Shown piece after piece: positions 20,603-45,743 of a stretch of 64,000 bases of DNA (the stretch's first letter is position 1; each line of letters starts with the position of its first letter). Source of the stretch: Octopus sinensis (lineage: Eukaryota); contig NC_043000.1 in assembly GCF_006345805.1 (NCBI RefSeq), positions 111,724,001 through 111,788,000 on the forward strand, read 5' to 3'. A model generated the notes under the pieces. The model did not search any database. It worked only from the letters and a program-made list of their open reading frames with translations, and had not been told where the DNA came from. The translations under genes and the position numbers were made by a program.

Positions 20603-21000
20603 TATCATCATCATCATTGTTTAACGTCTGTTTTCCATGCTGGCATGGGTTGGACGGTTCGACCAGGGTCTGGGAAGCCAGAAGGCTGCACCAGGCCCCA
20701 ATTTGATCTGGCAATGTTTCTACAGCTGGATGCCCTTCCTAATGCCAACTACTCTGAGAGTGTAGTGGTTGCTTTTTACATGCCACTGGCACAGGGGGCA
20801 GAGGAGCTGGCATCAACCACGATCGGATGGTGCTTTTTATGTGCCACTGGCATGAAAGCCAGTCAAAGTGGCACTGGCATCGGCCACGTTCAGATGGTGC
20901 TTTTTACATGCTACCGGCACGGAGCTCACAATTACAATTTCCATTTGATTTGATTTTGATGTACCTGACTCAATAGGTCTCCTCAAGACACGGCAAAGGG
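20603..21000 (-). mobile_element. Family C / RTE 3' UTR fragment with internal tandem units
   Basis: Same organisation as 59775-60330. Confidence 0.75.
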
Positions 21001-21623: not shown

Positions 21624-21722
21624 CTCATCATCATCATCATCGTTTAACGTCCGTTCTCCATGCTAGCATGGGTTGGACGGTTCGACCGTGGATCTGGGAA
21701 GCCAGAAGGCTGCACCAGGCTC

Positions 21723-21768
<46 letters not shown>
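21560..21768. repeat. (TA)n tracts flanking a truncated family C tail, about 75 bp upstream of the exon 1 acceptor
   Basis: Direct reading. Confidence 0.8.
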
Positions 21769-21770: not shown

Positions 21771-21851
21771 CAGTTGTTAACTTTATTGACAGACTGTCAG
21801 TATAATTATATGTATTTAATTTTTGTTTTTTGTTATTTTGTAGCTTGGAAA

Positions 21852-22003
21852 ATGGATGGTATCGTAGCTGGTCGTAAGCTATTGGAAGCCTCTTTACCAA
21901 AAGAAGACACTATTGGCATCATATCTGGTGGTTTAGTTGGAGGGCTAGCTGCCATGTTGATCCTGGTCTTTCTCTTCGCTCTCTGCAATACATGTAAGGA
22001 GAG
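21852..22003 (+). CDS. Coding exon 1: MDGIVAGRKLLEASLPKEDTIGIISGGLVGGLAAMLILVFLFALCNTCKE (TM helix + CxxC)
   Basis: Acceptor ttttgttattttgtag ends at 21843. ATG in aaaATGG context at 21852. Hydrophobic stretch at residues 21-44. Donor AG|gtaagt at 22004 (phase 2). Confidence 0.9.
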
Positions 22004-23234: not shown

Positions 23235-23272
<38 letters not shown>

Positions 23273-26200: not shown

Positions 26201-29200
26201 TGATTTAGCACACCTGCAATCAATGTTGTGACCAACCATTCTTTTATTCAGACACGCCTATCTTGGACTACACTGTCTAATGTGTTCTGTTTTTGTTTGG
26301 GGTGGGGGTTAAGAGAGGAATTTGGTTGTTTTTTCTAGCAAATTGAACATTCTCACAGAAGCACCTCTGCTCACTTGAAACAGCAGGTTGTGGTCATCTG
26401 GTTTTCTCTTTCATGCATAGCTGTAAAAAACCATGCTGAAACTGACCTCACCTCTGCTGGTGCCATGTAAAAAAGACACTCAATCCACTCTGCAGGGTGG
26501 TTGGTGCCAGGAAGGGTATCCAGCCGTAAAAACCCTGCCCAAACAGACACAGTAGCCTGGTGTAGTCTTCTGCTTGGACGGCTCCTGTCAAACTGCCCAA
26601 TTGGCCCTCGTGCCGGTGGCACTTTAAAACCACCCACTACACTCTCGGAGTGGTTGACGTTAGGAAGGGCATCCAGCTGTAGAAACACTCCCAGATCAGA
26701 CTGGAGTCTGGTGCAGCCATCTGGTTCACCAGACCTCAGTCAAATCGTCCAACCCATGCTAGCATGGAAAGCGGACGTTAAACGATGGGAAGTGGACAGA
26801 CGTTAAACAATGATGAAGAATACTTTAGACCTGCTTGCCATGGATTGGTCAAAGACTTTATTATTGAAGCTATATTATGTGAGTGTATGCCTGGATACTC
26901 TTCCCATCACCTACCCTTACCTGATTTTTTTCCATTCAGGTATTTATTATTCCTCTGGTCTTCACAATTGCAGATCTACAGGTTGAGGAATATACGCAGA
27001 GAACATAGTCATGACCACACAGTTATGCTTGGACTGTGTCATGTGAGGACGTGCCGAATGTAAACGTATGTCACACACACACAACAAGCTTCCATGCAGT
27101 TTTCACCTACAAATTTCACTCCAAAGTATTGGTCAGCTTGAGGCTATTCACACCACCATACCTGCCCTTAATAGGCGCAGACGTGGCTGTGTGGTTAAAA
27201 GTTTGCTTCCCAACCACATGGTTCCGGGTTCAGTCCCACTGCATGGTACCTTGGGCAAGTGTCTTCTTTTATAGCCCCGAGCAAAGCAAAGTCTTGATAG
27301 TGGATTTGGTTGGTGGAAACTGGAAGAAACCTGTTGTGTGTGTGGCACTCATGAAGTCAGCAAGAAGTTTGCAAGACAAAGACCTCTCAGCTGAGAGAAA
27401 GAGTGGAATGGAAGGAAGTGGCTGTGAGTCAGGTGAGGGGCTGGAGTATGTTAGAGGGACAGACATAGTTGTGTTACTATGGAGGAGACACTTGGCTGCC
27501 CCAGGAGAGGAAGGAGAGAGAGAGGGAGAGAGAAAATAGATGGCATTAGAGATGTATTGTGGTTTATCTACAGGAAACAGTGAGTGGGGGGGGGGCGTAT
27601 AAGTGGTCCAGAGGGGTTAGAAGGAGGGATGTTCCATAAGAGTATGAAGGGGGATGTTTAGAGATGGGGGAAGACATGGCTGTAGTGAGTGATGGTGGGA
27701 GAAAATGGAGCAGCTGAGAGGCGGGTGTGGTAGATGTTTTAGAGCATGCAGATAGACACACAAGAAAGAGTGGGTGGTGATCATGGGTAGAGGGATGGTG
27801 GGTATGTTGGGAAGCTGGGTTGTAGGGGTGCTTTGACAGAGGACAGGTTGTGTGTGTGTGTGTGTGAAGGAGAGAAGGCTCAGTCATGAAGGACAGCCTG
27901 TATGGATGACCACAAGTTTTATTTGGCTCACCATGTCTTCTCAAGTACAGCAAATTGCCAGACAGTCCCTTATCTTCTCTGTGAAACTCAACATCCAAAA
28001 ATTGTTTCTCACCACTTCATCCCACATCTTCCTGGGTCTGCTCCTTCCACAGGTTCCCTCCATAACAAGAGATCGGCACTTCTTTATGCAGTCGTCCTCA
28101 CTCCATACCAACGCAGTCTTCTCTCTTGCACAAAACATCTGATGCCTCATAGACCCAGTTTTTCTCTTAAATCATTTACACTCTGCACATGTGTACAGAC
28201 ACACACAAATGCTCATGCACACACACATATACATCTTCCTGATCTGACATTCATTCATTTATTCCCTGTTTTTTTTTCTGCTTCAGCAAAAAAGAGCAAA
28301 GCAAAACTGGAACACTCCCTAAAATGATGACTGATAGTACCCACAGAGATGTTGTTCAGGTAAGAATACCTCATTCATTTTGTGAAGAGCTAAAAATTAT
28401 TTATCTCTGATGCAGATACATACACACAATGAGTGGCTGTGTGGTAAGAAGCTTGCTTCCCAACCATATAGTTCCAGGTTTAGTCCCATTGCATGGCATA
28501 TGGGCAAATGTCTTCTTGGGTCATCCAAAACTTTGTGAATGAATTTGGTAGATGGAAACTGTAAGAAGCCCGTCGCATGTGTGGATTTGGTTAACGGAAA
28601 CTGAAAGAAGTCCATCACACACATTTACATCATTATCATACGTCCCTTTTTCCATGCTGGCATGGTTTGGAGAGTTTGACAAGAGCAGATGAGCCAGAGG
28701 GCTCTGCCAGGTTCTATGTCTGCTTTGGCATAATTTCTACAGCTGGATGCCAACCACTTAACAGTCTGCTGCGTGTCTTTTTACATGGCACCACCTCCAA
28801 TGAGGTCACCAAGTATCTGCCAGAGGAAGTCCCTTCAAGGTAGTGGGGTATTCGTTTAACGTCCGTTCTCCATGCTAAAGAAAGAAACTATAATGGAGGG
28901 AGAGGATCAGATATCTTGCTGAAGAGGTGAATACCTGGCTTGCCCACCTGGGACAAGAGAGACAAAGAAAGAAAGAAACAAAGAAAAAAGTCCAGGTACA
29001 ATATGAATATGAGACGGAATAGGGAGTGGACCGAGTGAAAACAGTGTGGCACATGATTAGAGATAGGGAACAAGTTGGACACAGAGGTTATCAGTCCAGT
29101 GGAGAGGGGAATGAAGAAAATAGAAGATAAGCTGTGGGGGAGGAAAGCTTGACAGAGCCTCAATTCTGCAGAAATGGATGGGTCTTTTGAAGCCCAACAT

Positions 29201-31907
29201 AACACAATCTTGATTCCCTGTCATCTCCTCTGAGAGGCTCAACATCTCCAGCTCAGACTGTCTCCTTGCCTTGACTTCTTGTGATAGATGTAAATGAGCG
29301 TCCCTGTCATACAAGTGGTGTCTTTCATTTCTAAACATCCAGGAAAGTTGTGCCCAGCTATAGAGAAATGTTACCATATTTGGAAGGAACGGGTGAGGGT
29401 TGGTGAGAGGAAGGGCATCAAGCCGTAGAAAATGTGCTTCAACAAATTCCATCCGACTCGTGCAAGCATGGAAAAGTAGACATAAAATGGTGACGATGGT
29501 TCTGTTTAACCACCGGGGTGTAAAGAAAACTTGTCCACATTGAGTAAATGAAAAACAAAAAGTTTTTTTCTCAAAGCTGCTGCAAGGGAGATAACTTTGG
29601 CTGGACTGTTTCCCATAATGTCGTTCAGAGCAATGGTTCTCAACACTGACAAATTCCAGTCCGTCTCCACAGAACTTTAGGGAAATCTTTTTACTACCCT
29701 GTACTTCGTTAATGAGAACACAAAACAGAAGCCCCGGGGGGAGGGTTGTAACTGTGAAATACTGCTGAAAATTTGGAGTGAGGGGACTGAGAGGTAGATA
29801 TGCAAGATTACATTTAACCTATTTCTTTACTACCCACAAGGGGCTAAACACAGAGAGGACAAACAAACGGATTAAGTCGATTACATCGATCTCCTAAGGT
29901 GACGAGCTGGCAGAAACGTTAGCACGCCGGGCGAAATGCTTAGCGGTATTTCGTCGGCCGCTACGTTCTGAGTTCAAATTCTGCCATGATCGATTTTGCC
30001 TTTCATCCTTTTGGGTTCGATAAATTAAGTACCAGTTACGCACTGGGGTCCATATAAACGGCTTAATCCATTTGTCTGTCCTGTTTGTTCCGTCTGTGTG
30101 TAGCCCCTTGTGGGTACTAAAGAAATAGGTACTTAATTTATTGACCCTTAAAAGGATGAAAGGCAAAGTCGACCTCAACGGAATTTGAACTCAGAACGTA
30201 ATACGGCTACACATTTCGCCCGGCGTGCTAACGTTTCTGCCAGCTTGCAACCAATATCTGACATCTCTACATATTGTCTTTCCTTCATGGCGTATCGATG
30301 AGTGAAGGCATGGCCAAGCACTTGCTTCTGAAAACAGCCCAGGCGCAGCGGAAGTGGTTACGTTACTCTCTCTGCAGTACTGTTGCTGTAACGTTGGAAA
30401 AGGCCGACCAAAACATCCCATGAAACCTATTTCAGCCTTGACTATTCCAATCTTCATACAGCTGTCTCCATGTGTCTACGACTACCTTGTATTCTAATGC
30501 TCCTGTCATGTGAGCGCATGGCAAGGAGCTCCTTTGTTAGCTTGTGGATGTTGTTGTTGTTGTAATTGATTCTTTTTAATGGTGGTGATGTTGTTGTTGT
30601 ATTTCAGTCCATTATTGAATCTGATCACTTAGCTGTTGATTTTGAAACTGGAATCATTCCATTATCAAATGGTATCGCACCTACCAAAAGTTGGACATCA
30701 GATCTGGCCATGTTCACGTGAGTCTCAGCTCTTTTTTCTATTATTACTCTCTTACTCTGTATTTCATGCACTTACGCACACACATACATATACATACACA
30801 CACACACTAATGATGATGATGATGATGATGATTTTGCTGGTGTTTTTGCCTAGCCTTAAGTCAGCCTTGATCAAGCACATCTATGATCAAAAGCCATCCA
30901 GCCATGACCAACTCATCTCTTTATATAGCCATGGCCTTCTTTGTCCGATGTGCCCTTCTTCTCTTTAAGATGTTTTGGGAGTAGTCTTGAGAGAAATCAG
31001 CATAATTTAATGTCCATTTTCCATGCTGGCATGGGTTGGACAGTTCAATTGGAGCTGGCAAGGCTGGAGGGCTGCACCAGGTCCCAGTCATCTGGTCTAG
31101 CATACTTTCTATGGTTGGATGTCCCAGATTGTACTGGGTGCTTTTCATATGGCCCAAGCACAGGTGCCTTCTATGTGGCACCAGCACAGGTGCCAGCTAA
31201 TTTAAGCAGGTTTCTCTCTCTCTCATTGATGTTAATGATGATGTTTGAATGTTGAAGGATCTGGTGGAGTTAGGGACTATTCTTGTCCTTTTTCCAGCCA
31301 CCGCTGCTTTACTTACAGTACCTACCCTGTCTACCTAACCCTACCCCCACCTTCAACTACCCACCACACTTCCATGTAACCTCCCCTCAGTAGATGAGGG
31401 AGTGAGGCTGGCAGTTTTGTTAATAAGCAGTCGTAACAGAATATTGACTTCAGAGGGGAAGGCTGAAAGGTCAGAGGTCACTATCCATCAGACAGTTTCA
31501 TCATTAACAAGGACCAGACATGAGCAAGAAGACACACAGACTAATTTTTTTTCTTTTTGATTTTTTTAAAATTGTCTAAATATCTAAAGTGACAAAGAAG
31601 TAGAATGTGTCTAGGGGAAAGGGTGTTCCTCTCAGACATGGCTTCCTGTCACCACCACCCACCACCCCACCTTATGTTTCAGAACTTCAGTTTCCATGAC
31701 AATGGTTTTTGTTGTTGAGTAACCCAAAGTTGACTTTAATTGGAAAACTGTCAGCAAGTTTGTGTGTGTGTGTGTGTGTGTGTTATCGTGTATGTATAAG
31801 TATGTCTGGGGATTGTACTGTTTTTGTTCTCCTGTCTTTTTTTTTTTTTTTTTTTTAGTTCTTAAAATGTATGTGAAGGAAACATCTTGTAACCCTTCCC
31901 TGCACAT

Positions 31908-31943
<36 letters not shown>

Positions 31944-34900: not shown

Positions 34901-37900
34901 TGCTACTCATATCTGCACTCAGTCTGCTTAGGAGGTTGTTGTGTCCTAGCATATGTGCTGCTTCTTTTAGTTTCTTTAAGAACAAATACCTTAGGAATGA
35001 GGACCCAGGCTCAAAATTTCCCCAAGACACCTGATGAAGGCTGAAGGGTATATCAGTCAAAACATTGTGTTAACAAACAAGATGAGGACAAATAGCCATC
35101 AAATGTAAATAATGTACATAATTCCTCATCCCTTAAATATAGAACTGTATTAATATCTGGTTTCTTTTTTCTCTTCAACAGCAGACCTAGTTCCATGGAT
35201 GGTTCCGTGCTACCAAATGGTCGTCAATTGCCGTCTCCCCCTGGTCCATCCACCAGTCACCCATTACCTGATGTCACTATGGTCAACCAGTCACCCAATG
35301 TACTCCCCAATGGTAACCGCAAGAGCTGCCACTTGCCTGCTTGTAATTCAGCCAGTGAGGACGGGGTGAACAAGGACCCGGACCCTTACAACCACATTGG
35401 ACAGCCAGGGACTGGAACTGGTGGCAAAGGCACCAGTTGCAACAACAACAACAACAACAATGATGTGCGGAGACGCGAGGAGCAGGAGGGAGTGGAAGAG
35501 GAAGGGGAGAATACGTACGACACGGCGTATGACCGTGTGGGGACAGCATCATCATCGGTTGTGGTGAAGAAGAGTGGCTGCATCACGTTGACGCAGGCTG
35601 ACTTTGATAACTACGGCAGTGAGCAGTTGTACGCCTCTGTTGATGGTGATGAAGAGGATGATGATGATGCAGACAATACTTATGCATCGCTAAGGCTCGG
35701 CAAGAAGCGACCAGCAGCGCCCCCACTGGCTCTGGCCCTCACTCCGACAGATGCGACATTCCGTGACATCTCCTATAGTATTGTACCCGGCGACGACGAC
35801 ACGGACGACCCGTATTCCAAGATCCCGGGAGACCTTGTACTGGCAAGACCCGATGTAGAGGACCCTTACTCTAGCGTGGACGGCAGACCGACGGACGGCT
35901 GCTGTGGTGCGGCGGGGCCAGTATTACTGCCGATAGCCGCAGCAACAGGAGCGTCGGCCAACATAGCAGTCCCCGAGACCACATCACCCCTGTCTCCTGA
36001 TGACCTGCCAGGTCACATTGTCGAGGACGACTACGCTACAGTGAACAAGTTGCCAAGAAGCCCGAACAATATCGCTGTAACCCTAGATGTACCCCCTGAT
36101 ATACTGATGGCACCACCACCAGAACCACCGCGGGCCTACAAGGAGGAGGACTTCCTCAACCGTGACAACCCGCCACCAGATCATGTGGATGCTGCTCCAG
36201 CTGGAGCTGGTCCCATCCTTTTACCAGAGCCTGTTGCTCAGCCACGTAAGTAAATGTTCAGATTATTACCTTACACTACCACACCCCAACACCAACACTA
36301 CATCTACAATTTTCACAACCCAGTCAATAATATATTCCCCTTCGTTGTTCATAACTCACTGCTCCATCAGCTTGCCAATGCCTTGACAGTAGAAATCACT
36401 GGATCTTGACTTGAGAAAGTCTTCAAGCCACGTCTTCATTTCCATGCCGTTGTTGATGAAAATGTTTTTGCATTAATTCAAATAACATTGGAAGGGAATA
36501 AAATAAATGTGGAAAAAAAAACAAATTTATCTGGCAATCCAATACATCCCCCCCACCCCACCCCAGTTATACAACCTCTACCATTATCTCCTATATGACC
36601 ACCACTACATGTTTTAATACATAAAGATTTTTCACTAATTCTGTGAACGTAATCATGGTTTATTTTGCAGTTGTGGACTGCCAGCTTTCATCTCTCACTC
36701 TTCCTTCTACTTTCTCCTCCTCCTTCCATGGTTCAATCCTTCATTGCCACCACTATCCCCACTTCGATACACACTTGTCTCATAAAACAGGCTTTGTGTG
36801 TTGAAAGTGGCCACACCCACTAGTGTTAGGCCCAGAGTCAGTGGTCCATTGGCCACACCCACTAGTGTTAGGCCCAGAGTCAGTGGTCCATTGGCCACAC
36901 CCACTAGTGTTAGGTCCGGATTCAGTGGTCCACTGGCCACACCCACTAGTGTTAGGTCAAGCTTCAGTGGTCCAATGGTCACACCCACTAGTGTCCATTG
37001 GCCACACCCACCAGTAAAGTGGCCAATATTGTATATTCTGCAAATTTAGAATGATCAATGTATTGCACAATATCCACACTTACTGGTCACTTATCGTGCC
37101 ATACTCAATAACTTCTCGGTGACCCTAGCCCATGATTCCACTCTCAGTTGAAACCACTTTTTTTTAATTGGAAATGTATGAATATCATGACTTCACCACC
37201 AACTCGAAGTGATTTCTCAAGCCTATTGTCACTTATCTTTCTCTTTGAAGAAGGTCAAGTGAAGCCATAGTCTCCACTTATCCTGCATACAAGATCAATC
37301 AGTACCTGTAATCTACTGTGGGATCATTATATTATGTTTCCCTCTCACATTTCCTGCTGAAGCTGACCACTTTACTCGTCTGCTGTCCCTCTGATCTTTT
37401 AACCCTTTTGATACCAACCCCTGGTTCTAAGTTATAATCTTCATGTTTTAAAGTAATCAAAACATAAAGTGATGGCTTGTTGCCAACTTAATATTGCAGC
37501 CCCATGAAAAGGAAAAGTGCTACTGCTATTTAGCCCCAAGAAACACCGTTTCTAGTTGGCTACATGACACAAACGTTCTGTGTCCTTAAGTTTTCAAACA
37601 GGGGAGATAAGCACCTCCACCCAACAAAGCCAGCACCCAGAGACTAGTTTCAGGGTAGTTGCATTTCATCAGTCCGGAGTAGCTTGGCTTTGCTAGCTGT
37701 TGGTGCTAAATCACTGTTGGAAACTTATCGAATTTCAAATGAAATAAATTCACTGATCTACAAAATTAGAATGATTGCATTTCTAAATTTCTCAGAGAGA
37801 GTTATGCAGTAGCAGCACAATAAAGTAAAAAAAAAAATTAAAACAATTTCATCAAAATTACATGTTGATTTACATACCAAACTTCAGCTTAAAAACGACA

Positions 37901-39886
37901 GTTATTTTGACAAATTCTTCCTTATTTCAACAGAAATATGGTAACAAAAGAGTTGGTCTCACCACTGACCACAAGATTTAATCCATTGACCAGATTAACA
38001 TTATCAGCTGTCAGCCTTCATTGCTTGTAGAAAAAAAACATTCTGCTACAAACAACTGAACTTGGTCTTTGACCTCACTTTTAACTTAATGTCCTTATTC
38101 AAATCTCTTTTTAAAATTCCTCTCTTTGATTTTCGTCTCTGTTTGGTCTGCAAATGTAAAAAGAAATGAAAGTTTTCTTTGTGTGCATCCAGGTGGGTCT
38201 TGAGATCTGTCTGTTCAACTTTGTTACTCATTGACCTTTTGGAAATTTGAAGAATACAGAAATTGAATGGCCAAACGTTGAAGACTACCTCTGCACTGCT
38301 TCCTATTCTAAGAGTCCATGTGTTGGGGTTTTGTTGTTCTTCATCCTCTCCCTGTCCATTTCAGAAGTGCTGCAAACTGGGCACAGCTGTTTGGATTTTG
38401 ATAATGAGGATGATTTGACCAGTTCTTGAACATTCATTCAACTGGCTTTGGCACTAGTGGCAAACACACACACATACGCAAAAATGGAAAGAGACGGGCA
38501 GGAGTGGGACATTAAAATTTATTAATTGAACTTGATTGACATAAACCCTTTCCCCTCTCCTCACACCCATAAAAGAGAATCAGAGCCACCAAATAGGCAG
38601 TGCCAAAACATCCACCCAATAAACTTGTATTCTTTTAAACCCTAGCCTCCTGTAACCCCCCTCCCTCACGTACACACACCATTTGCCATAACCCTCTCCT
38701 CTACCTTAATATTTCTTTTCTTCTCTGTCTACTTCAGCTAAAGCAGAATACCCCTACACCAAAGTGACAGCCAGGGAGTCACTATCCAGTATAAATGCCC
38801 GACAAAGACTGCTAAACATGTACGAAACTGTTCCAGAAACAGAGAACACCTACGCTACCGTAAGTACAAACCGTTTTGTGTTATAAAGAGTGAATTTAAT
38901 GGATAGAAAATAAAGGTGCAGCCAGGTGTGTGCGGTTAAGTAGTTCATCTGGCAACCACAGAGTCTTATGTTGCGTCTAAGGCAAACACGTACATGCATG
39001 CAAAAATAGTGAGGGAGACAGACATTTCAATTTATTACTTTATTATTAAATGTTCACCTTGAGCAAGTTTCTTCTCCCATACGAGCCTTGGATAAAAACT
39101 GCATAAAAGCCCATCATGCATTTATAGATGTATCTTTTATTTGTTTCAGTCAATTGACTGTGACCATGCTGGAGCACTGCCCTGAACGTTTTTTTTTCTT
39201 TTCGATTAAAGCAAATTGATCCTAGAACTCTTTTATCAAAGCTTATCGGTCGCTTTTGCCGAACTGCTAAGTTATGTGGACATAAACACACCACCACCGG
39301 TAGGCAAACAGTGGAGGGGAACACAGACAGACAGGCACATACACACACAACAGGCTTCTTTCAGTTTCTGGCTACCAGATCCATTCACAAGGCTTCGGTC
39401 AGCCCAAGGCTGTAGACGATAGCCAAAGGTGTCACGCAGTGGGACTGAACCTGGAACCATGTGGTTGAGAAGCAAGCGTCTTACCACACAGCCACGCCTG
39501 TGCATGAAAGTTAGCCTTCTTCATATGAGCCCATTTGAACAAAAGAAAATATGTTGTTGGGCTTGTTTTACAGCCTGTGCACTATCTCTGTGCACTCAAT
39601 GCACTTGCAATAAAGAAAAACCTTTTGTGAAACAGGTGAAAGTTCTTTACAGGAAGTATTTATTTCTATAAAATACTGCCTTGATACAAATATATTTGTC
39701 TATGAAATTAGATGACTGAATGATGTTATATTTGTGTCAAGGAAAGCTCACAGGTGTGGCTATGTAATTAAGCTTGCTTCTCAACCATGCAGCCTTAGGT
39801 TCTGTCTAACTGTGCAGTATCTAAGACAAGTGTCTCCTACAACCGAAGCCTTTTGAATGGATTTGGTAGGTGGAAACTGAAAGAAG

Positions 39887-39927
<41 letters not shown>

Positions 39928-42900
39928 CCTTGTCTCGACATGATGTATGTAAATGAGCATCGTCATACGAGTGGAGTTGTTAGTTTCGAGTCTTCCAGGG
40001 AAAATATTACCTTACTTAGAAACAGATGCAGGTTGGCAACTAGAAGGGCACCTGGTTGTAGAATATATACCGCAGCAAGTTCCGTCTGACTCGTGCAAGT
40101 ATTGAAAAGGAGACGTTAAAATGATGAACAAGCTATATCTGTATCAAAGTAAAGGCAGGGGAGACAACTCAGTGTCAAACCTAATTGTGTGAAAAATGTA
40201 ACGCGCCATTCGAAATCGGTTAATGTGGCAGGAGGGGAGGGGTTCGTCTGGGGCCATGACATCTGCTAGTTTTATGGTTATATGGTACTTGTTGTCAATA
40301 ATTCTGTTTTCTGTAAATATTTGTGTATTTGTTCTGGTGTGCAGAGTAAGCTTAAAAGTCGATTGCAGATCTTAGGTTGTTTGGTTCTACAACTTGACTA
40401 AATTGTTTGGGAAATCCAGCTTTTTAGAGCTTGTCTCTCTTGCCTTGAGACAGCATTCACCCGGGGTGGGTTGAGCTGGCTTCATCCTCAATGCTGCATC
40501 TCTCACAAACGCTGACCAGACCTGGCGATTTGAGGCTAACAACTGCATGATCTCCAACCACTCCTTATTCCAGTGGCAAACGCTGTAGATATGAGGGCCT
40601 GAGTTGGGTTCCAGATCAGTCTTGACTGTTATCATCCAGGTTTTTTGTTGTCCACCACATCGCTTTCGCCAACCCTGAAGGGGAGCTGGGGCAATTGCTC
40701 CGTAGATGGATTCTCCTGGTTGATGATGGAGGGCATGACCCAGCCAACGCTTATGTCTTTAGAATGTGTGTGTATATACATGAGGCACAGACGTGACTAT
40801 GTGGGTGGCTACATGGACTCAACATCAATCTCACTGTATGGCACCTTGGGTAAGTGTCTTCTACTATAGCCCCGAACCAACCAAAGCCTCGTGACTAATA
40901 GATAGAAACTGGAAGAAGCCCTAATCTATTGTGCGTGCATGTATTTCTGTTTCCTTACCTTGACTATCATATGAGCAGTGTCCATCATTTCCAGTCTTAG
41001 GTTCTGTCCAACTGTCCAGTATCTAAGACAAGTGTCTCCTACAATAATTCACAGGACAAATGAAGCCTTGTGAATGGATTTGGTAGGTGGAAACTGAAAG
41101 AAGCCTCTGTGTGTACCCTTGTCTCAACATGTATGTAAATGAGCATCATTGTCATATAAGTGGAGTTGTTAGTTTCGAGTCTTCCAGGAAAAATATTCAA
41201 CAAATCTGCCTCTCCCTCCCCTACTTCCACCTCCCCCCAAAAAATTAGGCCTGTGTATGAAAACTATTACACTGTGTAACACAATTTTTGTCCTTGGGTA
41301 GCAACTGTTATGTCTGGTCATGGGGTACAATTACTTTGCTTGGAAACGGGTGAAGGTTGGCAACAGGGTGGGCACCCGGCTACAGAAAATCTACCTCAAC
41401 TAGTATGGAAAGACAGACGTTAAGTGATGATGATGGACTTGATGCAGTCTTCTGCCTTGCCATCCAACCTATTGCAGCATGGAAAAACAGACGTTAACTG
41501 ATCGTGTGTGTGTGTGTGTGTACACACACACATATACATTACTTGCTCTATGTTTTGAGAGAGTGTATATAATTCACTGTACATAGTGTATATGGATTAA
41601 TTCAGTTCCCAGCCATTACTTAACGTCCATCTTTCCCTGAGAGTCGATCTAGAAGTGTGTATTTCTAAACAAAGGGTTGTCTTACAGAAGCAGGGCATTA
41701 TGTGTCTTTGAAAATATTTATGTTGTGTATGGATGTGAATGAAAATGTTTGTGAGCTTATTGCCAAGCTGTTATTATTTGGTTCAGTTTAATTATTTAAA
41801 TTGTTTCTCTCTCTCGACTTAGGTTGATGGTGGTTCAGGGGATGGTGTTGTCGTGCGTCGGACAAACCGTTCCGAGAGCATCCCAAAACGAAATAGCCAA
41901 ATTAGTGAAACATATGCTGAAATTGGAGCAACAGGTAAGAATTGTAGCAGTTATATACATTCATAATAATACACCTGGGTCTTACAGCAACTATTGTAGG
42001 GGCTGGTCCTTAGCAAATTGACCAGTTAGGAATTGGGACAACTCTACATCATCATCCTTTAATGTCCACTCTCAATGCTGGCATGGGTTGGATGGTTTGA
42101 TTGGATCTGATAAGCCAGAGAGCTGCACCAGTTTCCAGTCTGATTTGGCTTGGTTTCTACAGCTGGATGCCCTTCCTAATACCAACCACTCTGCATAAAT
42201 AATTAATACACATGGGCCCCAGTCATTGTATTCTGGCAGTCAGCAAAATATAGAGGTGAGGACCAAAACAGTTATATGTGAATAATTAAACACCTGGGCC
42301 CAACAGCAACCATCTGTTCTGATCTCCAGTGAACAGCTAAGGACTGAGTTGAGCATCTTCCTCGTTGTCATCATTTAATGTGTTTTCCATGCTGGTATGG
42401 GTTGGACAGTATGATGAGCTGGCAAGTCACAGGATTGCGATGTACATAAAAAAAAACAAGGAAGCACATGAGCCTTACAACAAAAACCATTCCATTCTGG
42501 TTGTTAGCAAGATATGTAGATAAGGAACAGGGGAGTTCTATGTAGATAACAAAACAAAGCAAGAATTGGGTTCTAGTTCTCAGCAGGGTAAAGAGCTAGA
42601 AACTGGGACAGATTTTAAGCTGCTATTTCTAGCATATCAAGTAACTACATAGAGCACTAATTCTTAAACAGACCACCCTGATACACTTGTCCACTACAAA
42701 GTCTAACTTCATTTGTTACAGAATTTTAAAAATATTGGGTCATTCTATAAATAATGCGGTTTTTACAATTACATTAAAAGTTGGAAGGGGATAGGATAAA
42801 CTACCTGCATCAACTTGCTATAAAAGCAGGTAGTAATTTTACTTTGGACTTATTCTTAGTGCAAGTTTTGAAGAGTGCAGTTCCAATTTAACAATTATTT

Positions 42901-45743
42901 TTTCAAAGCTGTAATGGAAGTGACAAAGGAGTATATTCAGCATATTTTGCTTTATGAGTTCAATAAAGGCAACAATGCAACAGAAAGTGCGAGGAATATT
43001 AATGCAGTATATGGGGATCGGACAATAAGCATAAACCAGGGTCAATGGTGGTTCCAGAAATTCCGAGCTGGAGGCTACAGCCTAGAAGACGAGCCTTGTC
43101 CTGGAAGATTTGGAGAGCTCAACAAGGATGTCCTGCAACTCCTGATGGAACAAAATCCCATTGTAACTATAGAGGAACTAGTAGAGAAGCTTGCATTTGG
43201 TCATTCAACCGTTCATCGACACCTGCGTGCCATTGGAAAAGTCGGCAAATTGGGTCAATGGGTTCCACACAAACTTTCCGAGTCTAATCGCACACAGAGA
43301 ATGAATGTGTGCTCTTCTTTGCTGTCACATCTCACAAATGAACCTTTTTTGGACTGACTGGTGACGAGAAATGGGTTCTCTATAAAAATGTCAATCACCG
43401 AAGACAGTAGGTAGGGAAAAGAGAAACAGTGGCATGCCAGGCTATAGAAGGTCTTCACCTACGTAAGGTGTTATCTGTTTGGTGGGATATGAAAGGTTTA
43501 GATCACTTTGAACATTTAAACCCAAACCAAACGATAACAAAGGCGATCTAATGGGAACAGCTTGAGCAGCTTAAGTCAGCGCTAGAAGAAAATCGACCAT
43601 CTTTGGTTTCAAGACAAAAGGTGTTCTTCCATCAGGATAATGCTCATCGTGTAATACATACAGTGTGGATGACATCCCAAAGACTGGAGCAGTCTGAATG
43701 CGAAACGATGCTCCACCCACCATATTCACCGGACATTGCTCCATCTGATTATCCTATGTTCTGCAGTCTTCAAAACTGTAGACGAGGTCAGAACAGTATT
43801 TGAGGAGTATTTTTCATCACAGACAAGTGAATTTTGGAAGGGGGGGAGGGCCTTGCAAGTCTACAAGATAGGTAGAAGAACATTGTAGAAAATGAAGGAG
43901 AATGTATTTAAGATTAAAAAAGAATTTTGTTTATCTTAATTTTGAAAAATAGAAGTATAACAAAACCGCATTATTTAGAAAATCCATGCAAATAGTTGAT
44001 CTTCTTGAAAGAACATATTTTTGGTATACGTCAACATAAAAAGCTCCCACTACACTCTCAGAGTGGTTGGCGTTAGGAAGGGCATCCAGCAGTAGAAACT
44101 CTGCCAGATCAGATTGGAGCCTGGTGCAGCCTTCTGGCTTCCCAGACCCCGGTCGAACCGTTCAACCCATGCTAGCAGGGAAAGTAGATGTTAAACAATG
44201 ATGATGACAGTAAGTTTTTGTTTTTCTTTTATTTGATCTCTAGTGTAGCACTCAATACAAAAATATCAAGAATCACTCATGTAGAAAGACCAATCAGGCA
44301 TGGCATGATTGAGTATATGATAACCCTTTAGCATTTAAACCGGCTGGATCTGGCCTCTCGCATCTATCTTGCAATGTCATTCTAAAGATAAACAATTACA
44401 TCGTTGAAATGTTGAAGCTATGAGATAATGTACGATTAATTCAAAACAATGTGAATAAATAAGAATTACCATATGACAGAAATCTGAATATCAAAAGGAT
44501 AATAAATACCTGGCAGATGGATTTGAGACATTTTGGCACCACTTATTTGGCATTTGCTGAAATCACGGCTGATTTGTTTGGCATCAAACGTGTCAATATC
44601 TCTCTCTCGTTTAGTCTGTACAGGTTTATTGATGCATATTTGCCTCCAGCACTGTAAAATACTGTTGCCAAAACAGCCTGAATGTCCAATCAGGCAGACC
44701 AAATCATCAGCTTCCAAACAGCTGTGTCCAATCATTTCATTCTGTTGGCAGTTAACCTGTGAGTCCTAGGTTCAAATCTCACCGCAAGCAGTATAGTGTA
44801 TATTGTCCCGTAGACAAGAAAACTTCTTGCACAACCCTTTGTCTTTTCATTGTTGAATAAATTTCTTGTTTTGTTTTCTGTTTCAGGTTTACATGCGGAA
44901 TCTGCGCCCGTTCCACCATCACTTGATTCCTTACGAACTGTAACAAAACAGAATCCCCATGGCAACGACTTCCGTCGGTCAGGGGGTGACTTTCTACAGG
45001 CGGCTGCTGAGTTGCCACACGAGTACGATGTGGTGAGCAAACGTCGTACGTTCCCCATAGACTTCTCACAAGCACACTATGACGTTCCGTCAGCATCCCC
45101 ATCAACACAAACCATGTCATCTTCATCTCAGAAAGGTCTTGCTAACCATAATGATTCCCACCAGCTGCCTCCACCCTCCTTGGGAGGTGGACACAAACCC
45201 AGAAGTCCCTTGGGTGGATTTTCAATTGCATCCTTGTCAGTTGCAACATCATCAGGGGCGGGGGCAGGAGGAGCGGGGAAGTCGCAAGAGGCCGCCTCGG
45301 GCTCCTGTGATTTGCCCTCGTCAAGCAAGAGGGACACACCTGATTCCTCAGCAAGGAATTCATCCACAATATCCCCACGTACCGACCCCGATTATCAGAG
45401 TCTGAGAGATGGCACCGGCAGTGAGAATGACAGCGAGTACGATCCTAACTACGAGACGGTGGAGGACGCGCAGCGCAAGGCGGCTGCACTGCGCCAAAGT
45501 AAGGCACAGCGACGCCACTTCTATGAGGAAGTGGATGCTGCACAGCTGCCAAAACCTTCGAGCCCGTCACCACCGTCGTCTGGCTGTGCCAGTGCAACGA
45601 CAACACCAGCTGCACCGGTTGCAGCAATGACGAGGGCGACGGCTGCAGACGCTCGCGAGCGTGTACTGCGCCAACACACGTACGAGGACGTGCGAGAGGT
45701 GAGAAGACAACACAGAGCAATGCGCTGGAGCCAAGAGAAGTAA
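21852..45743 (+). CDS. Spliced gene model (7 coding exons) for a PAG1/Cbp-like single-pass transmembrane adaptor protein, about 855 aa (768 aa without exons 2-3)
   Basis: Manual exon chaining with GT-AG borders and matching phases 2/0/2/1/0/1. Short N-terminus, one TM helix, LCNTCKE (CxxC), then a Pro/Ser/acidic low-complexity tail with 23-26 Tyr. The family call rests on architecture and motifs, not on an alignment. Confidence 0.8.
23266..23566 (-). mobile_element. tRNA-derived SINE, family E, full length
   Basis: Head gtggaggcgcaatggcccaatggttagggcagcag...gattcccagaccggg, flanked by (TA)n. Confidence 0.75.
24677..25073 (+). mobile_element. SINE family A dimer
   Basis: Full unit 24677-24893, then a head-truncated unit. 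Confidence 0.75.
26612..26815 (+). mobile_element. Family C repeat (RTE 3' end)
   Basis: Near-identical to 15250-15427 and 44030-44207. Confidence 0.8.
27930..28185 (-). mobile_element. RTE LINE C-terminal fragment
   Basis: Translation ...CIKKCRSLVMEGTCGRSRPRKMWDEVV... is typical of an RTE ORF end. Confidence 0.75.
28287..28359 (+). CDS. Coding exon 2: (S)KKEQSKTGTLPKMMTDSTHRDVVQ
   Basis: Strong acceptor tttttttctgcttcag and donor CAG|gtaag. Enters phase 2, exits phase 0. Basic residues follow the TM as expected (positive-inside). Confidence 0.75.
29818..30247. mobile_element. Cluster of family A SINE pieces, mostly minus strand
   Basis: Repeated gaatttgaactcagaacgta / gagctggcagaaacgttagcacgccgggcgaaatg segments in both orientations. 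Confidence 0.75.
32390..32650. repeat. Compound (TCTA)/(TCTG)/(TA) microsatellite
   Basis: Direct reading. Confidence 0.85.
33217..33309. repeat. Hairpin formed by two family C tails in inverted orientation
   Basis: Perfect 21-bp arms TTTAACGTCCGCTTTCCATGC (33225-33245) / GCATGGAAAGCGGACGTTAAA (33278-33298), extended by (CAT)n/(ATG)n. Confidence 0.85.
33550..33737 (+). CDS. Candidate coding exon 3: QRNTNRLCCVRRICSDMVLQMDVLRPSLHKPLYAVTSRQYKSLVTHFRTLQRKCWHSIDYDN(S)
   Basis: The only open phase 0 to phase 2 segment I found that bridges exon 2 and exon 4. It is CpG-containing. In-frame alternative acceptors at 33541/33550/33553. The donor gtgtta and the pyrimidine tract are weak. Confidence 0.5.
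34106..34241 (-). mobile_element. Penelope-like element terminal repeat (left inverted arm)
   Basis: Inverted copy of 34984-35116. Carries a CUGAUGA...GAAAC hammerhead core. Confidence 0.7.
34154..34199 (-). ncRNA. Minimal type I hammerhead ribozyme, core intact
   Basis: GACAC-CUGAUGA-A-GGCUG-gagggUAUAU-CAGCC-GAAA-C-GUU-GUGUU. Stem I 5 bp, stem II 5 bp, palindromic AACGUU in place of stem III. Confidence 0.75.
34262..34760. mobile_element. Unclassified interspersed repeat between the Penelope-like arms
   Basis: Non-coding, bounded by (ATT)n tracts on both sides. I recognise it only as repeat-like and found no second copy in the window. Confidence 0.35.
34984..35116 (+). mobile_element. Penelope-like element terminal repeat (right arm) with inactivated hammerhead at 35026-35071
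   Basis: GACAC-CUGAUGA-AGGCUG...CAGUC-AAAA-C-AUU-GUGUU. G12 reads A and GUU reads AUU, both at CpG positions. Confidence 0.7.
35182..36245 (+). CDS. Coding exon 4 (large; Pro-rich, acidic; YASV, YASL, YSIV, YSKI, YSSV, YATV motifs)
   Basis: Acceptor tttcttttttctcttcaacag, 352-aa ORF in the track, GC/CpG-rich against background, donor C|gtaagt at 36246 (phase 1). Confidence 0.92.
36808..37010. repeat. 42-bp minisatellite (about 4.5 units)
   Basis: Unit tggccacacccactagtgttaggcccagagtcagtggtccat, with GGCCACACCCA at 36809, 36851, 36893, 36935, (36977 variant) and 37000. Confidence 0.9.
37637..37677 (-). ncRNA. Minimal hammerhead-like motif (core and GUC intact, stem II weak)
   Basis: CCGGA-CUGAUGA-aaugcaacuacccu-GAAA-C-UA-GUC-UCUGG. 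Confidence 0.55.
38738..38859 (+). CDS. Coding exon 5: (P)KAEYPYTKVTARESLSSINARQRLLNMYETVPETENTYAT
   Basis: Acceptor tttcttttcttctctgtctacttcag and donor ACC|gtaagt. Phase 1 to 0. Missed by the ORF track because it is short. Confidence 0.88.
39121..39505 (-). mobile_element. SINE family B, near full length
   Basis: Reverse complement of 19833-20216. Confidence 0.8.
40420..40680 (-). mobile_element. LINE (RTE-like) C-terminal fragment of a second family
   Basis: Translation ...WMITVKTDLEPNSGPHIYSVCHWNKEWLEIMQLLASNRQVWSAFVRDA... resembles non-LTR ORF ends. Confidence 0.5.
41823..41934 (+). CDS. Coding exon 6: VDGGSGDGVVVRRTNRSESIPKRNSQISETYAEIGAT(G)
   Basis: Acceptor tttctctctctcgacttag and donor G|gtaaga. 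Phase 0 to 1, exactly bridging exons 5 and 7, and completing a YATV motif across the junction. Confidence 0.88.
42735..43990 (+). mobile_element. Near full-length decayed mariner (DD34D) transposon; transposase pseudogene from about 42914
   Basis: TA-TTGGGTCATTCTATAAATAATGCGGTTTT / AAAACCGCATTATTTA TIRs. HTH N-terminus, WVPHKL, TGDEKW (frameshifted), FFHQDNA, HPPYSPDIAPSDY. Internal stops. Confidence 0.92.
44030..44207 (+). mobile_element. Family C repeat (RTE 3' end)
   Basis: Matches 15250-15427. Confidence 0.8.
44324..44499. mobile_element. piggyBac-like MITE, family 2
   Basis: TAA-CCCTTTAGCATTTAAAC ... GAATATCAAAAGGA-TAA. Body shared with 52267-52458. Confidence 0.55.
44887..45743 (+). 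CDS. Terminal coding exon 7 (YDVV, YDVP, YQSL, YETV, YEEV, YEDV; ends ...RAMRWSQEK*)
   Basis: Acceptor ttgttttctgtttcag (phase 1), 297-aa ORF in the track, CpG-rich, TAA at 45741-45743. Confidence 0.9.

What the first reader, a model, noticed from the sequence alone, without database searches (positions are those of the whole stretch)
21852..45743. PAG1/Cbp-like transmembrane adaptor (raft-type phosphotyrosine scaffold) in an apparent cephalopod
Seen in the sequence: ~20-aa ectodomain without a signal peptide, one TM helix, CxxC immediately after it (LCNTCKE), and no folded domain. In exons 4-7, 18 of 23 tyrosines have V/I/L/P at +3 (YASV, YASL, YSIV, YSKI, YSSV, YATV x2, YTKV, YETV x2, YAEI, YDVV, YDVP, YQSL, YEEV, YEDV, YNHI, YDRV). 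There is one ITIM-consensus site (ISYSIV) and several PxxP tracts. Established knowledge: palmitoylated TRAPs (PAG1/Cbp, LAT, NTAL, LIME) have this layout, and PAG1 recruits Csk through a YSSV motif to restrain Src-family kinases. These adaptors are known mainly from vertebrate immune signalling and are hard to detect by BLAST, so the gene is likely annotated as uncharacterised. Inference: this is an invertebrate Src/Csk membrane scaffold, either a distant PAG1 relative or a convergent, roughly twice as long analogue. It lacks the C-terminal PDZ-binding motif of PAG1.
Basis: partly seen in the sequence, partly recalled or inferred. Interest (0 to 1): 0.88.

Follow-up and report, generated by a model that had tools for sequence, protein, structure and literature searches.

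The report
Octopus PAG1/Cbp-like membrane adaptor gene
A seven-exon octopus gene encodes a membrane-anchored, unstructured protein carrying conserved phosphotyrosine docking motifs; it is found across molluscs, is annotated everywhere as uncharacterised, and is probably a distant relative of vertebrate PAG1/Cbp, the raft adaptor that brings the kinase Csk to Src-family kinases.

Summary
Seven GT-AG exons (21852-45743, + strand) join in frame to an 829-aa protein. It is 100% identical to Octopus vulgaris/sinensis LOC115210338, which is annotated as uncharacterised. The protein has a ~23-aa N-terminal stub, one TM helix, CNTC, and a ~780-aa disordered tail. The tail holds 23 tyrosines, 18 with V/I/L/P at +3 (p 2e-7).

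Squid transcripts have a stop two codons upstream of the ATG. Transcripts join the exons. 15 of 23 tyrosines are at least 90% conserved across 24 mollusc orthologues (p 2e-11).

Evidence for a PAG1 relationship:
- PAG is the only notable Pfam hit, but below threshold (23.6 vs 27 bits).
- A mollusc HMM scores PAG1 at 25-32 bits in three colinear segments, against 3 bits or less for LAT, LAT2 and LIME1.
- 4 of 300 block-permuted decoys reach the real score.
- The phase-2 intron after the di-Cys motif lies at the same codon in turtle PAG1 and two gastropods.
- Both families have RxLPxxP.
- Many gastropod orthologues end in -TRL, like PAG1.

Two other colinearity tests were not significant. Homology is probable (~0.6), not proven. 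The Src/Csk scaffold function is inferred.

The parts
21852..22003 (+). Exon 1: start codon, 23-aa exoplasmic stub (conserved G-R-[RK]-L-L), TM helix (21921-21983) and di-Cys motif CNTC (21984-21995). It ends in a phase-2 GT donor. A pyrimidine tract plus AG acceptor at 21842-21843 implies an unlocated 5'UTR exon upstream.
28287..28359 (+). Exon 2 (73 nt, phase 2 to 0): juxtamembrane basic segment SKKEQSKTGTLPKMMTDSTHRDVVQ.
30608..30717 (+). Exon 3 (110 nt, phase 0 to 2): SIIESDH...PLSNGIAPT... It contains the SNG motif that aligns with the TNGD of PAG1.
35182..36245 (+). Exon 4 (1064 nt), the main phosphotyrosine-motif exon. It holds the class-I SH3-ligand-type RQLPSPP (35222-35242). Its Tyr motifs are YNHI, YDRV, YASV, YASL, ISYSIV, YSKI, YSSV (35867-35878) and YATV (36032-36043). 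It also holds the invariant PPEPPRAY (36113-36139).
38738..38859 (+). Exon 5 (122 nt): YTKV (38755-38766), predicted helix ARESLSSINARQRLL (38770-38814), YETV, and the first three codons of the invariant EN-x-YATV motif, which spans the exon 5/6 junction.
41823..41934 (+). Exon 6 (112 nt): V of YATV, the near-invariant GGSGDGVV block, and YAEI (41913-41924).
44887..45743 (+). Exon 7 (857 nt including the stop): PVPPSLDSL, YDVV, YDVP, YQSL, DPNYETV, RRHFYEEV (45522-45533), RERVLRQHTYEDV (45681-45692) and two C-terminal helices. It ends -WSQEK and then TAA. Poly(A)-signal-like hexamers begin at 45748.

Best explanation
The locus is the octopus member of a mollusc-wide family of type III (N-out) single-pass membrane adaptors. 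The family works like, and is probably distantly homologous to, vertebrate PAG1/Cbp.

Shown by the sequence:
- A ~23-aa exoplasmic stub with no signal peptide.
- One TM helix.
- A juxtamembrane di-Cys motif (C-x(1-2)-C).
- A ~780-aa intrinsically disordered cytoplasmic tail.

Inferred mechanism:
1. The two cysteines are S-palmitoylated, which places the protein in ordered membrane microdomains next to lipid-anchored Src-family kinases (SFKs).
2. The conserved R-x-L-P-x-x-P motif (RQLPSPP) docks an SFK SH3 domain.
3. The SFK phosphorylates the roughly 15 conserved acidic Y-x-x-V/I/L sites.
4. pY-[S/A/T]-x-V sites (YSSV, YATV, Y[ST]KV) recruit the Csk SH2 domain. pYEEV, pYED[IV] and pYE[ST]V sites hold SFK SH2 domains.
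5. Csk at the membrane phosphorylates the SFK tail tyrosine and closes a negative feedback loop.
6. In gastropods a C-terminal -TRL would tie the scaffold to PDZ proteins. Cephalopods lack this ligand.
For: Gene and protein:
- Seven-exon model identical to P0001.
- N-terminus complete in squid transcripts.
- TM helix and a disordered remainder.
- Flank charges fit N-out in most orthologues. The C-flank minus N-flank charge is positive in 14 of 20, zero in 2 and negative in 4.

Motifs:
- 18 of 23 Tyr have V/I/L/P at +3, p 1.7e-7.
- 15 of 23 Tyr are at least 90% conserved across 24 cephalopod, gastropod and bivalve sequences, Fisher p 2.4e-11. Y+3 is V/I/L at nearly every conserved site. R126, L128, P129 and P132 (RxLPxxP) are nearly invariant and PPEPPR is invariant.
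- A review lists Cbp/PAG1 as having an N-terminal TM, two palmitoylation sites just after it, nine phosphorylatable Tyr, four YEEI/V-type Src-SH2 motifs and one YSSV Csk-SH2 site. It also states that Csk and SFKs are conserved in all animal phyla (PMC3492796).

Relationship to PAG1:
- Of 24,736 Pfam models, PAG (PF15347) is the only one below E = 1 on P0001: E 3.2e-5, 23.6 bits.
- hhalign of the mollusc alignment against 18 amniote PAG1 sequences gives probability 78%, E 1.9e-5.
- A mollusc HMM scores 120 PAG1 proteins at up to 32 bits, in three colinear segments: TM to RELPxxP, DPY..[DE]YA[SV]V..PPxPP, and the C-terminal Y motifs.
- Human PAG1 scores 25.2 bits. The ecto+TM+CSSC head alone scores -0.5 bits. 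Tail-shuffled decoys reach the real score 0 times in 300, and block-permuted decoys 4 times in 300.
- Other raft adaptors score far lower: LIME1 2.8, LAT 0.6 and LAT2 -2.2 bits.
- Intron 1 is phase 2, in the fifth codon after the first Cys, with ...GAC AG|gt in turtle PAG1, Patella and Aplysia. Octopus differs by a 1-aa insertion. Intron 2 is phase 0 in turtle PAG1, octopus and Patella.
- Heterobranch orthologues end in -TRL, -TRV or -TKL, and amniote PAG1 ends in -TRL.
Against: - No binding, phosphorylation, palmitoylation or localisation data exist. The whole mechanism is read from motifs.
- The Pfam PAG score is below the gathering threshold, and only 1 of 24 family members hits at all.
- With the TM removed, the hhalign local score (31.3) is no better than block-permuted PAG (29.1 +/- 5.1).
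- My own profile-profile dynamic programming found no significant colinearity (z about 1-1.5). Much of the similarity therefore comes from shared motif type, which can evolve convergently.
- The PAG1 YSSV site does not align with the octopus YSSV in the HMM alignments.
- Introns 3 to 5 differ in phase or position.
- Octopus lacks the PDZ ligand, and the protein is about twice the length of PAG1, with conserved modules PAG1 lacks (ARESLASM helix, GGSGDG, PPSLDSLH).
- Only amniote PAG1 sequences were available, and no intermediate phyla were found.
Confidence: 0.6

Rival explanations
1. A convergent analogue. It would be a lineage-specific molluscan transmembrane phosphotyrosine scaffold that evolved the PAG-like layout independently, as LAT, LAT2, LIME1 and PAG1 are thought to have done among themselves. 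It would work the same way but would not be homologous to PAG1.
For: - The cytoplasmic-only hhalign score equals that of block-permuted controls.
- My own dynamic-programming colinearity test was not significant.
- Pfam PAG is below threshold and is hit by 1 of 24 members.
- Most of the protein, including its best-conserved blocks, has no PAG1 counterpart.
- All hits in the large protein searches are molluscs.
Against: - The HMM score is specific to PAG1: 25-32 bits against 3 bits or less for LAT, LAT2 and LIME1.
- It depends on order, with 4 of 300 permutations reaching it.
- It does not come from the TM, since the head alone scores -0.5 bits.
- Intron 1 has the same position and phase, with the same GAC AG|gt context.
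- Both have RELPxxP at the same relative place and a -TRL C-terminus.
Confidence: 0.28
2. A phosphotyrosine scaffold whose main partners are not Csk and SFKs. It could be an ITIM/ITSM-like inhibitory adaptor recruiting an SHP-type phosphatase, or a positive, LAT-like adaptor recruiting Nck or Crk to actin.
For: - One ITIM-consensus site, ISYSIV, plus YDVV and YDVP sites of Nck/Crk type.
- Many Y-x-x-V/I/L sites also fit SHP-2 SH2 preferences (my own knowledge, not tested).
Against: - The ISYSIV tyrosine is only 67% conserved. The YDVP tyrosine is cephalopod-only (12%), and the YDVV tyrosine (79%) carries the YDVV letters only in octopus.
- The invariant sites are of Y[AST]xV and YE[EDS]V type, the Csk-SH2 and Src-SH2 classes named for Cbp (PMC3492796).
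- There are no YxN (Grb2) or YxxM (PI3K) sites among the conserved set.
Confidence: 0.08
3. Not a signalling scaffold. The YxxV/I/L motifs would be tyrosine-based sorting signals (AP-complex binding). Alternatively the protein is type II, with the acidic Tyr-rich tail outside the cell, for example sulfated or matrix-associated.
For: - YxxV/I/L overlaps the YxxPhi sorting consensus (Phi is a bulky hydrophobic residue).
- Acidic residues flank most tyrosines, as at sulfation sites.
- One orthologue is named 'glutamic acid-rich protein'.
- Four of 20 orthologues have a charge balance that does not favour N-out.
Against: - About 15 conserved sites is far more than sorting needs.
- A conserved +3 hydrophobic residue is not a sulfation requirement.
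- Cysteines on the tail side of the TM, the RxLPxxP and PPxPP ligands and the C-terminal PDZ ligands only make sense in the cytosol.
- The tail has no conserved cysteines, no N-glycosylation pattern and no folded extracellular domain.
Confidence: 0.04

Closest known systems
[quoted passage not shown]
   Same: - Short N-terminal exoplasmic stub without a signal peptide, one TM, and a juxtamembrane di-Cys motif.
- A phase-2 intron at the same codon after that motif, followed by two mini-exons and then a large exon.
- An RxLPxxP motif about 80-90 residues after the TM.
- An acidic, disordered tail with YEEV, YETV, YASV, YSSV, YATV and Y[AE][EA]I sites.
- A [DE]YA[SV]V...PPxPP block.
- A -TRL C-terminus in gastropod orthologues.
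- It is the best Pfam hit, and it scores 25-32 bits against the mollusc HMM.

   Different: - About twice as long (829 vs 432 aa), with 23 vs 10 Tyr.
- The Pfam score is below the gathering threshold.
- It has additional invariant modules: DPY-x-[KR]-[IV] repeats (expanded in gastropods and bivalves), the Y[ST]KVTARESLASM helix, EN-x-YATV-GGSGDG, PPSLDSLH and the RERVL-x-x-H-x-YED helix.
- Mollusc orthologues mostly have C-x-C rather than C-x-x-C.
- The octopus protein lacks the PDZ ligand.
- Introns 3 to 5 do not match.
Other palmitoylated transmembrane adaptors (LAT, LAT2/NTAL, LIME1)
   Same: The general design is the same: a tiny ectodomain, a TM, CxxC, and a disordered tail with SH2-docking tyrosines.
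   Different: - There is no sequence relationship. The mollusc HMM scores LIME1 2.8, LAT 0.6 and LAT2 -2.2 bits.
- LAT and LAT2 use YxN (Grb2/Gads) sites, which are absent from the conserved mollusc set.
ITIM/ITSM-bearing inhibitory receptors
   Same: One [I/V/L/S]-x-Y-x-x-[I/V/L] site (ISYSIV), and many Y-x-x-V/I sites.
   Different: There is no Ig or lectin ectodomain. The ITIM-like site is cephalopod-restricted. The motif number and acidic context are those of a kinase-substrate scaffold, not a receptor tail.

Membership tests
PAG1/Cbp (PF15347) | Type III topology: a short exoplasmic N-terminus with no signal peptide and a single N-terminal TM. | tested here: met
   23-aa stub plus TM at aa 24-44. 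Squid transcripts have an in-frame stop 2 codons upstream of the ATG. Stub lengths are about 8-36 aa in the orthologues with intact starts. Orientation is inferred from flank charge only.
PAG1/Cbp (PF15347) | Two juxtamembrane cysteines (the palmitoylation motif) directly after the TM. | tested here: met
   CNTC in octopus and C-x-C in all other orthologues. C45 is nearly invariant. Acylation itself cannot be tested with these tools.
PAG1/Cbp (PF15347) | Score at or above the Pfam gathering threshold (27 bits). | tested here: not met
   P0001 scores 23.6 bits, E 3.2e-5, aa 29-79 against profile positions 21-71. None of the other 23 members is reported.
PAG1/Cbp (PF15347) | Profile-level, colinear sequence similarity to bona fide PAG1. 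| tested here: inconclusive
   For: hhalign 78%, E 1.9e-5. The mollusc HMM scores PAG1 at 25-32 bits in 3 colinear segments. 0 of 300 shuffled and 4 of 300 block-permuted decoys reach the real score. Other adaptors score 3 bits or less. Against: cytoplasm-only hhalign and my own dynamic programming are no better than permuted order.
PAG1/Cbp (PF15347) | A Csk-SH2 docking site of YSSV type. | tested here: met
   Y341 is invariant; the site reads YSSV in octopus and Y-[S/A/T]-T-V in most orthologues. There are also YATV (Y505, fully invariant motif) and Y[ST]KV (Y473). Only motif presence was tested; binding cannot be tested here.
PAG1/Cbp (PF15347) | Several Src-SH2 type YEEI/V sites. | tested here: met
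   H-x-YEEV (Y757), H-x-YED[ILV] (Y810), DPNYE[ST]V (Y733) and YE-x-V (Y495). The tyrosine is invariant at all four.
PAG1/Cbp (PF15347) | A proline-rich SFK-SH3 ligand (RELPRIPP in PAG1). | tested here: met
   RQLPSPP in octopus and RELPEPP in most orthologues. R, L, P and P are nearly invariant, and the motif aligns with the PAG1 RELPRIPP in both hhalign and HMMER.
PAG1/Cbp (PF15347) | A C-terminal class-I PDZ ligand (-TRL). | tested here: not met
   Octopus ends -WSQEK, and no relic lies downstream. Orthologues in heterobranch gastropods end -TRL, -TRV or -TKL, and other gastropod lineages end -VKL or -TML.
PAG1/Cbp (PF15347) | Shared gene structure. | tested here: inconclusive
   Intron 1 has the same codon and phase in turtle PAG1, Patella and Aplysia, and is offset by a 1-aa insertion in octopus. 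Intron 2 is phase 0 in turtle PAG1, octopus and Patella. Both genes have two mini-exons and then a large exon. Introns 3-5 differ. Only one vertebrate gene was examined.
PAG1/Cbp (PF15347) | Raft localisation, SFK-dependent phosphorylation, Csk recruitment. | not testable with these tools
   These need biochemistry.
LAT / LAT2 / LIME1 adaptors | Sequence similarity to the family profile. | tested here: not met
   No Pfam LAT, LAT2 or LIME1 hit on any of 24 members at E up to 10. The mollusc HMM scores the Pfam-validated human proteins at 3 bits or less.

The most novel reading that the evidence does not exclude
The mollusc family is a true orthologue of PAG1/Cbp. On this reading the raft-anchored Cbp-Csk-SFK negative-feedback module dates back to the protostome-deuterostome ancestor rather than being a vertebrate invention. 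The ancestral protein would have been longer. It would have carried extra invariant modules (the Y[ST]KVTARESLASM helix, EN-x-YATV-GGSGDG and PPSLDSLH) that bind partners still unknown and were lost in vertebrates.
Probability: 0.5. Interest if true: 0.75.

Novelty: new variant of a known kind. Interest (0 to 1): 0.62.

Why it matters
Csk has no membrane anchor of its own. The review read here describes how scaffolds such as Cbp/PAG1 bring it to the membrane in vertebrates (PMC3492796). My four literature searches found no invertebrate Cbp/PAG, although Csk and Src-family kinases are present in all animal phyla (same review).

This finding offers a candidate membrane anchor for Csk outside vertebrates. 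The family is deeply conserved and unannotated in molluscs, it has PAG1's architecture and motif set, and there are detectable signs of common descent. That makes two questions testable. One is whether raft-based Src/Csk feedback is ancestral to bilaterians. The other is what the extra invariant modules bind. It also provides names and a starting HMM for about 30 'uncharacterized' mollusc proteins.

Tried and rejected
- A word-indexed homology search with exon 4 alone found nothing. The full spliced protein was needed.
It was run on exon 7 only and returned 10 hits: 8 family members, of which the two that carry names are molluscs, and 2 repeat artefacts, P0026 and P0033.
- Pfam on single exons, or on a 5-exon model lacking exons 2 and 3, gave no PAG hit. 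The hit appears only with the complete protein.
- My own profile-profile dynamic programming with linear or affine gaps and PAG block permutation gave z about 1-2, which does not discriminate.
- hhalign on cytoplasmic tails only scored the same as block-permuted controls.
- hhalign in global mode gave a non-colinear path.
- A PDB sequence search found only chance TM matches to the sodium-channel beta-2 subunit.
- A BLASTN of squid 5' and 3' UTRs against the window, meant to locate the octopus UTR exons, gave nothing significant.
- Four literature searches for an invertebrate PAG/Cbp found none. One further search term was rejected by the tool.
- The gene look-up for lizard PAG1 was not on record, so turtle was used instead.
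- My recalled SIT1 sequence did not validate against Pfam (23 bits, below threshold) and was dropped as a control.
- No tRNA-derived element was found for the interspersed repeat.
- Fold search was not run, because the model is disordered and any matches would be meaningless.

Full report
**1. What is in the window**

On the + strand, seven open segments between 21852 and 45743 are bounded by canonical GT-AG sites with pyrimidine-rich acceptors and compatible phases.

| Exon | Coordinates |
|---|---|
| E1 | 21852-22003 |
| E2 | 28287-28359 |
| E3 | 30608-30717 |
| E4 | 35182-36245 |
| E5 | 38738-38859 |
| E6 | 41823-41934 |
| E7 | 44887-45743 |

The joined CDS translates to exactly the 829-aa protein P0001. 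Public databases call it 'Hypothetical predicted protein [Octopus vulgaris]' and 'uncharacterized protein LOC115210338'. No other gene was evident in the 64-kb window. The rest is interspersed repeats, microsatellites and a mariner remnant.

**2. Check of the observation**

- The protein starts MDGIVAGRKLLEASLPKEDTIGI, followed by the TM segment ISGGLVGGLAAMLILVFLFAL and then CNTCKE.
- AlphaFold2, run with a 24-sequence alignment, gives a confident helix only at residues 24-48. It adds four short helices at 478-492, 736-749, 794-806 and 813-828.
- 665 of 829 residues have pLDDT below 50 (mean 44.9), so there is no folded domain.
- There are 23 tyrosines, all in exons 4-7. Of these, 18 have V/I/L/P at +3, against 25.5% expected from composition (binomial p 1.7e-7). 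V alone occupies +3 at 12 sites. Positions -3 to -1 are enriched in D, E, P and T.

**3.

*(a) An upstream ectodomain.* E1 is preceded by a splice acceptor 9 nt before the ATG, so an upstream exon exists. In three decapodiform transcript contigs (L001-L003) the orthologous ATG is preceded by an in-frame TGA two codons upstream, and two of the contigs hold several more in-frame stops in about 300 nt of 5'UTR. Annotated orthologues from gastropods also start with a short stub. The upstream exon is therefore non-coding.

*(b) Exon joining.* The transcripts are colinear with all seven octopus exons.

*(c) Motif conservation.* Searches returned orthologues from cephalopods, from patello-, veti-, neomphaline, caeno- and heterobranch gastropods, and from bivalves. 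All are unnamed or 'uncharacterized'. Findings from a 24-sequence alignment:
- 11 octopus tyrosines are invariant and 4 more are at least 90% conserved.
- That is 15 of 23, against 62 of 806 other residues (odds ratio 22.5, p 2.4e-11).
- The +3 V/I/L and the flanking residues are conserved as well.

The conserved motif set, in octopus numbering:

| Site | Motif |
|---|---|
| Y181 | D-x-YDHL |
| Y228 | YDH[IV] |
| Y262 | Y[AS]QV |
| Y279 | R-T-Y-x-V-V |
| Y323 | DPY-x-[KR]-[IV] (repeated many times in gastropods and bivalves) |
| Y341 | DDPY[SAT]TV |
| Y396 | [DE]YAVV-x-K |
| Y431 | PPEPPR-x-Y |
| Y473 | Y[ST]KV, followed by the helix ARESLASM-x-AR |
| Y495 | N-x-YE-x-V |
| Y505 | EN-x-YATV-[DE]-GGSGDG |
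| Y538 | [ED]-T-YAEI |
| (no Tyr) | PPSLDSLH |
| Y714 | P-[ND]-YQ-x-V |
| Y733 | DPNYE[ST]V |
| Y757 | H-x-YEEV |
| Y810 | RVL-x-x-H-x-YED[ILV] |

The non-tyrosine motif R-x-L-P-x-x-P (RQLPSPP in octopus, RELPEPP elsewhere) is nearly invariant.

**4. Relationship to PAG1**

I tested this in several independent ways.

*(i) Pfam.* The full protein's only Pfam match below E = 1 is PAG (PF15347): E 3.2e-5, 23.6 bits, aa 29-79. This is below the 27-bit gathering threshold, and the family was reported for none of the other 23 members.

*(ii) hhalign.* I recalled the human PAG1 sequence from memory. Pfam validated it at 752 bits, full length. I used it to collect PAG1 orthologues and aligned 18 amniote sequences.
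- hhalign of the mollusc alignment against the PAG1 alignment gave probability 78%, E 1.9e-5.
- The Viterbi path runs from the TM through RELPxxP.
- The highest-posterior block pairs [DE]YAVV-x-K...PPEPPR with EYASVDRNKK...PPPVPVK.

*(iii) HMMER.* An HMM of the mollusc family scores the 120 PAG1 proteins at up to 32 bits. The match falls in three colinear segments.

Scores against the mollusc HMM:

| Target | Score |
|---|---|
| Human PAG1 | 25.2 bits |
| Ecto+TM+CSSC head alone | -0.5 bits |
| Decoys with shuffled tail | -4.7 +/- 5.9 bits; 0 of 300 reach 25.2 |
| Decoys with only aa 41-150 shuffled | 8.6 +/- 3.3 bits; 0 of 300 reach 25.2 |
| Decoys with cytoplasmic motif blocks in random order | 6.4 +/- 7.3 bits; 4 of 300 reach 25.2 |
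| LIME1 (Pfam-validated) | 2.8 bits |
| LAT (Pfam-validated) | 0.6 bits |
| LAT2 (Pfam-validated) | -2.2 bits |

*(iv) Gene structure.*
- In turtle PAG1, exon 1 ends ...TGT GAC AG|gt. This is C-S-S-C-D-R, phase 2, in the fifth codon after the first Cys.
- Patella and Aplysia orthologues end exon 1 with ...GAC AG|gt, which is C-V-C-G-D-S, at the same codon and phase.
- Octopus has the same phase, with a one-residue insertion (CNTC).
- In turtle PAG1, octopus and Patella a mini-exon follows (52, 73 and 64 nt), ending in phase 0. Then comes a second mini-exon and a large exon that opens before RELPxxP.
- Later introns differ.

*(v) C-termini.* Many gastropod orthologues end -TRL, -TRV, -TKL, -VKL or -TML. 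Amniote PAG1 invariably ends -TRL.

**5. Evidence that weakens homology**

- With the TM removed, the hhalign local score (31.3) is well above column-shuffled controls (16.3 +/- 3.7). It is not above block-permuted controls (29.1 +/- 5.1).
- My own profile-profile dynamic programming showed no significant order effect.
- A large part of the similarity therefore comes from shared motif type, which SH2 and kinase specificities could shape convergently.
- Only the HMMER whole-sequence score and the N-terminal 130 residues carry order information.
- I put homology at about 0.6.

**6. Most likely mechanism** (inferred, apart from the sequence features)

The review PMC3492796 defines Cbp/PAG1 by these features:
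- an N-terminal TM;
- two palmitoylation sites just after it;
- SFK-phosphorylated tyrosines, including YEEI/V-type Src-SH2 sites;
- a YSSV Csk-SH2 site.

It also notes that Csk and SFKs are conserved in all animal phyla. The octopus protein has each of these elements, plus a class-I SH3 ligand. The proposed sequence of events is:
1. Palmitoylated C45 and C48 place the protein beside lipid-anchored SFKs.
2. RxLPxxP docks the SFK SH3 domain.
3. The SFK phosphorylates the acidic Y-x-x-V/I sites.
4. pY[SAT]xV and pY[ST]KV recruit Csk. From my own knowledge, the Csk-SH2 preference is pY-[T/A/S]-[K/R/Q/N]-[M/I/V/R].
5. pYEEV and pYED[IV] retain SFK SH2 domains.
6. Csk phosphorylates the SFK tail.

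The extra invariant modules (the ARESLASM helix, GGSGDG, PPSLDSLH and the C-terminal helices) have no PAG1 counterpart, and I cannot assign them partners.

**7. Rivals**

- *Convergent analogue with the same function (0.28).* See section 5.
- *Scaffold for other SH2 effectors such as SHP, Nck or Crk (0.08).* The ITIM-like tyrosine is only 67% conserved, and the YDVV/YDVP motifs are cephalopod- or octopus-specific.
- *Sorting signals, or an extracellular acidic tail (0.04).* This is contradicted by the number of conserved sites. It is also contradicted by cysteines, SH3 ligands and PDZ ligands all sitting on the tail side, and by flank charges that favour N-out in 14 of 20 orthologues.

**8. 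Novelty and verdict**

The locus is a real, correctly read gene. Its product works like PAG1/Cbp on every sequence criterion that could be tested, and it is probably a distant relative.

It fails two membership tests, the Pfam threshold and, in octopus, the PDZ ligand. It is also twice as long as PAG1, with additional conserved modules. I therefore file it as a new variant of a known kind rather than as a PAG1 family member.

No paper describing an invertebrate PAG/Cbp turned up in four searches.

Interest is 0.62. This is a credible, testable candidate for the missing membrane anchor of Csk in invertebrates, but it rests on sequence inference only.

Noticed in passing
window 42875-43803 (+), inside intron 6: Remnant of a mariner/Mos1-type DNA transposon. 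The ORF at 42875-43357 carries the Mos1 transposase HTH_48 domain (E 1.2e-19). A further transposase-like ORF fragment follows at 43603-43803. The reading frame is broken.
   Followed up: partly
window, 28 BLASTN matches, e.g. 15247-15427(-), 20600-20900(+), 21627-21726(+), 23573-23765(+), 26605-26787(-), 44037-44207(-), 59775-59950(+): An interspersed repeat of about 200 bp (SINE-like, 70-91% identity between copies) lies in both orientations throughout the introns and flanks. It generates the recurring spurious ORF text '...FHAGMGW...LQLDALPNANHSESVV...'. One copy ends about 125 bp upstream of the start codon. ARAGORN finds no tRNA-like part.
   Followed up: partly
window 21815-21851: A pyrimidine tract plus an AG acceptor (…ttttgttattttgtag|CTTGGAAAATGG) lies 9 nt upstream of the ATG. 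Exon 1 is therefore not the first exon. The 5'UTR exon(s) and the promoter were not located. Squid UTRs gave no BLASTN match in the window.
   Followed up: partly
P0002 vs P0003 (decapodiform transcripts L001-L003), at the exon 3/4 junction: One squid or cuttlefish isoform carries an extra 'TLSASKILHEN' exactly at the junction that corresponds to octopus exons 3/4. This suggests alternative splice-site use there.
   Followed up: no
Alignment A1, C-terminal columns (gastropod orthologues P0008, P0010, P0013, P0015, P0017, P0018, P0021, P0022, P0024, P0027): Heterobranch gastropods carry a long K/E/S-rich C-terminal extension. They and several other gastropods end in a class-I PDZ-ligand-like tripeptide (-TRL, -TRV, -TKL, -VKL or -TML). 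Several bivalve sequences end -EKL. Cephalopods, limpets and abalone lack the tripeptide.
   Followed up: partly
Alignment A1, columns 60-85 (octopus aa 7-11, window 21870-21884): The tiny exoplasmic stub carries a conserved G/W-[RQ]-[RK]-L-L motif across cephalopods and gastropods. hhalign places it opposite the G-S-L-L of PAG1. No function is known for it.
   Followed up: no
window 22045-22951 and 32297-32728: Long ORFs listed here (up to 240 aa) are artefacts of CA/TG- and TA-rich microsatellite or low-complexity DNA (His/Thr and Cys/Val/Tyr runs). They are not genes.
   Followed up: no
P0014 (Lottia gigantea) and P0015 (Physella acuta) N-termini: These gene models carry about 55 and about 20 extra N-terminal residues, upstream of the Met that aligns with all the other orthologues. 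These are probably mispredicted start codons.
   Followed up: no
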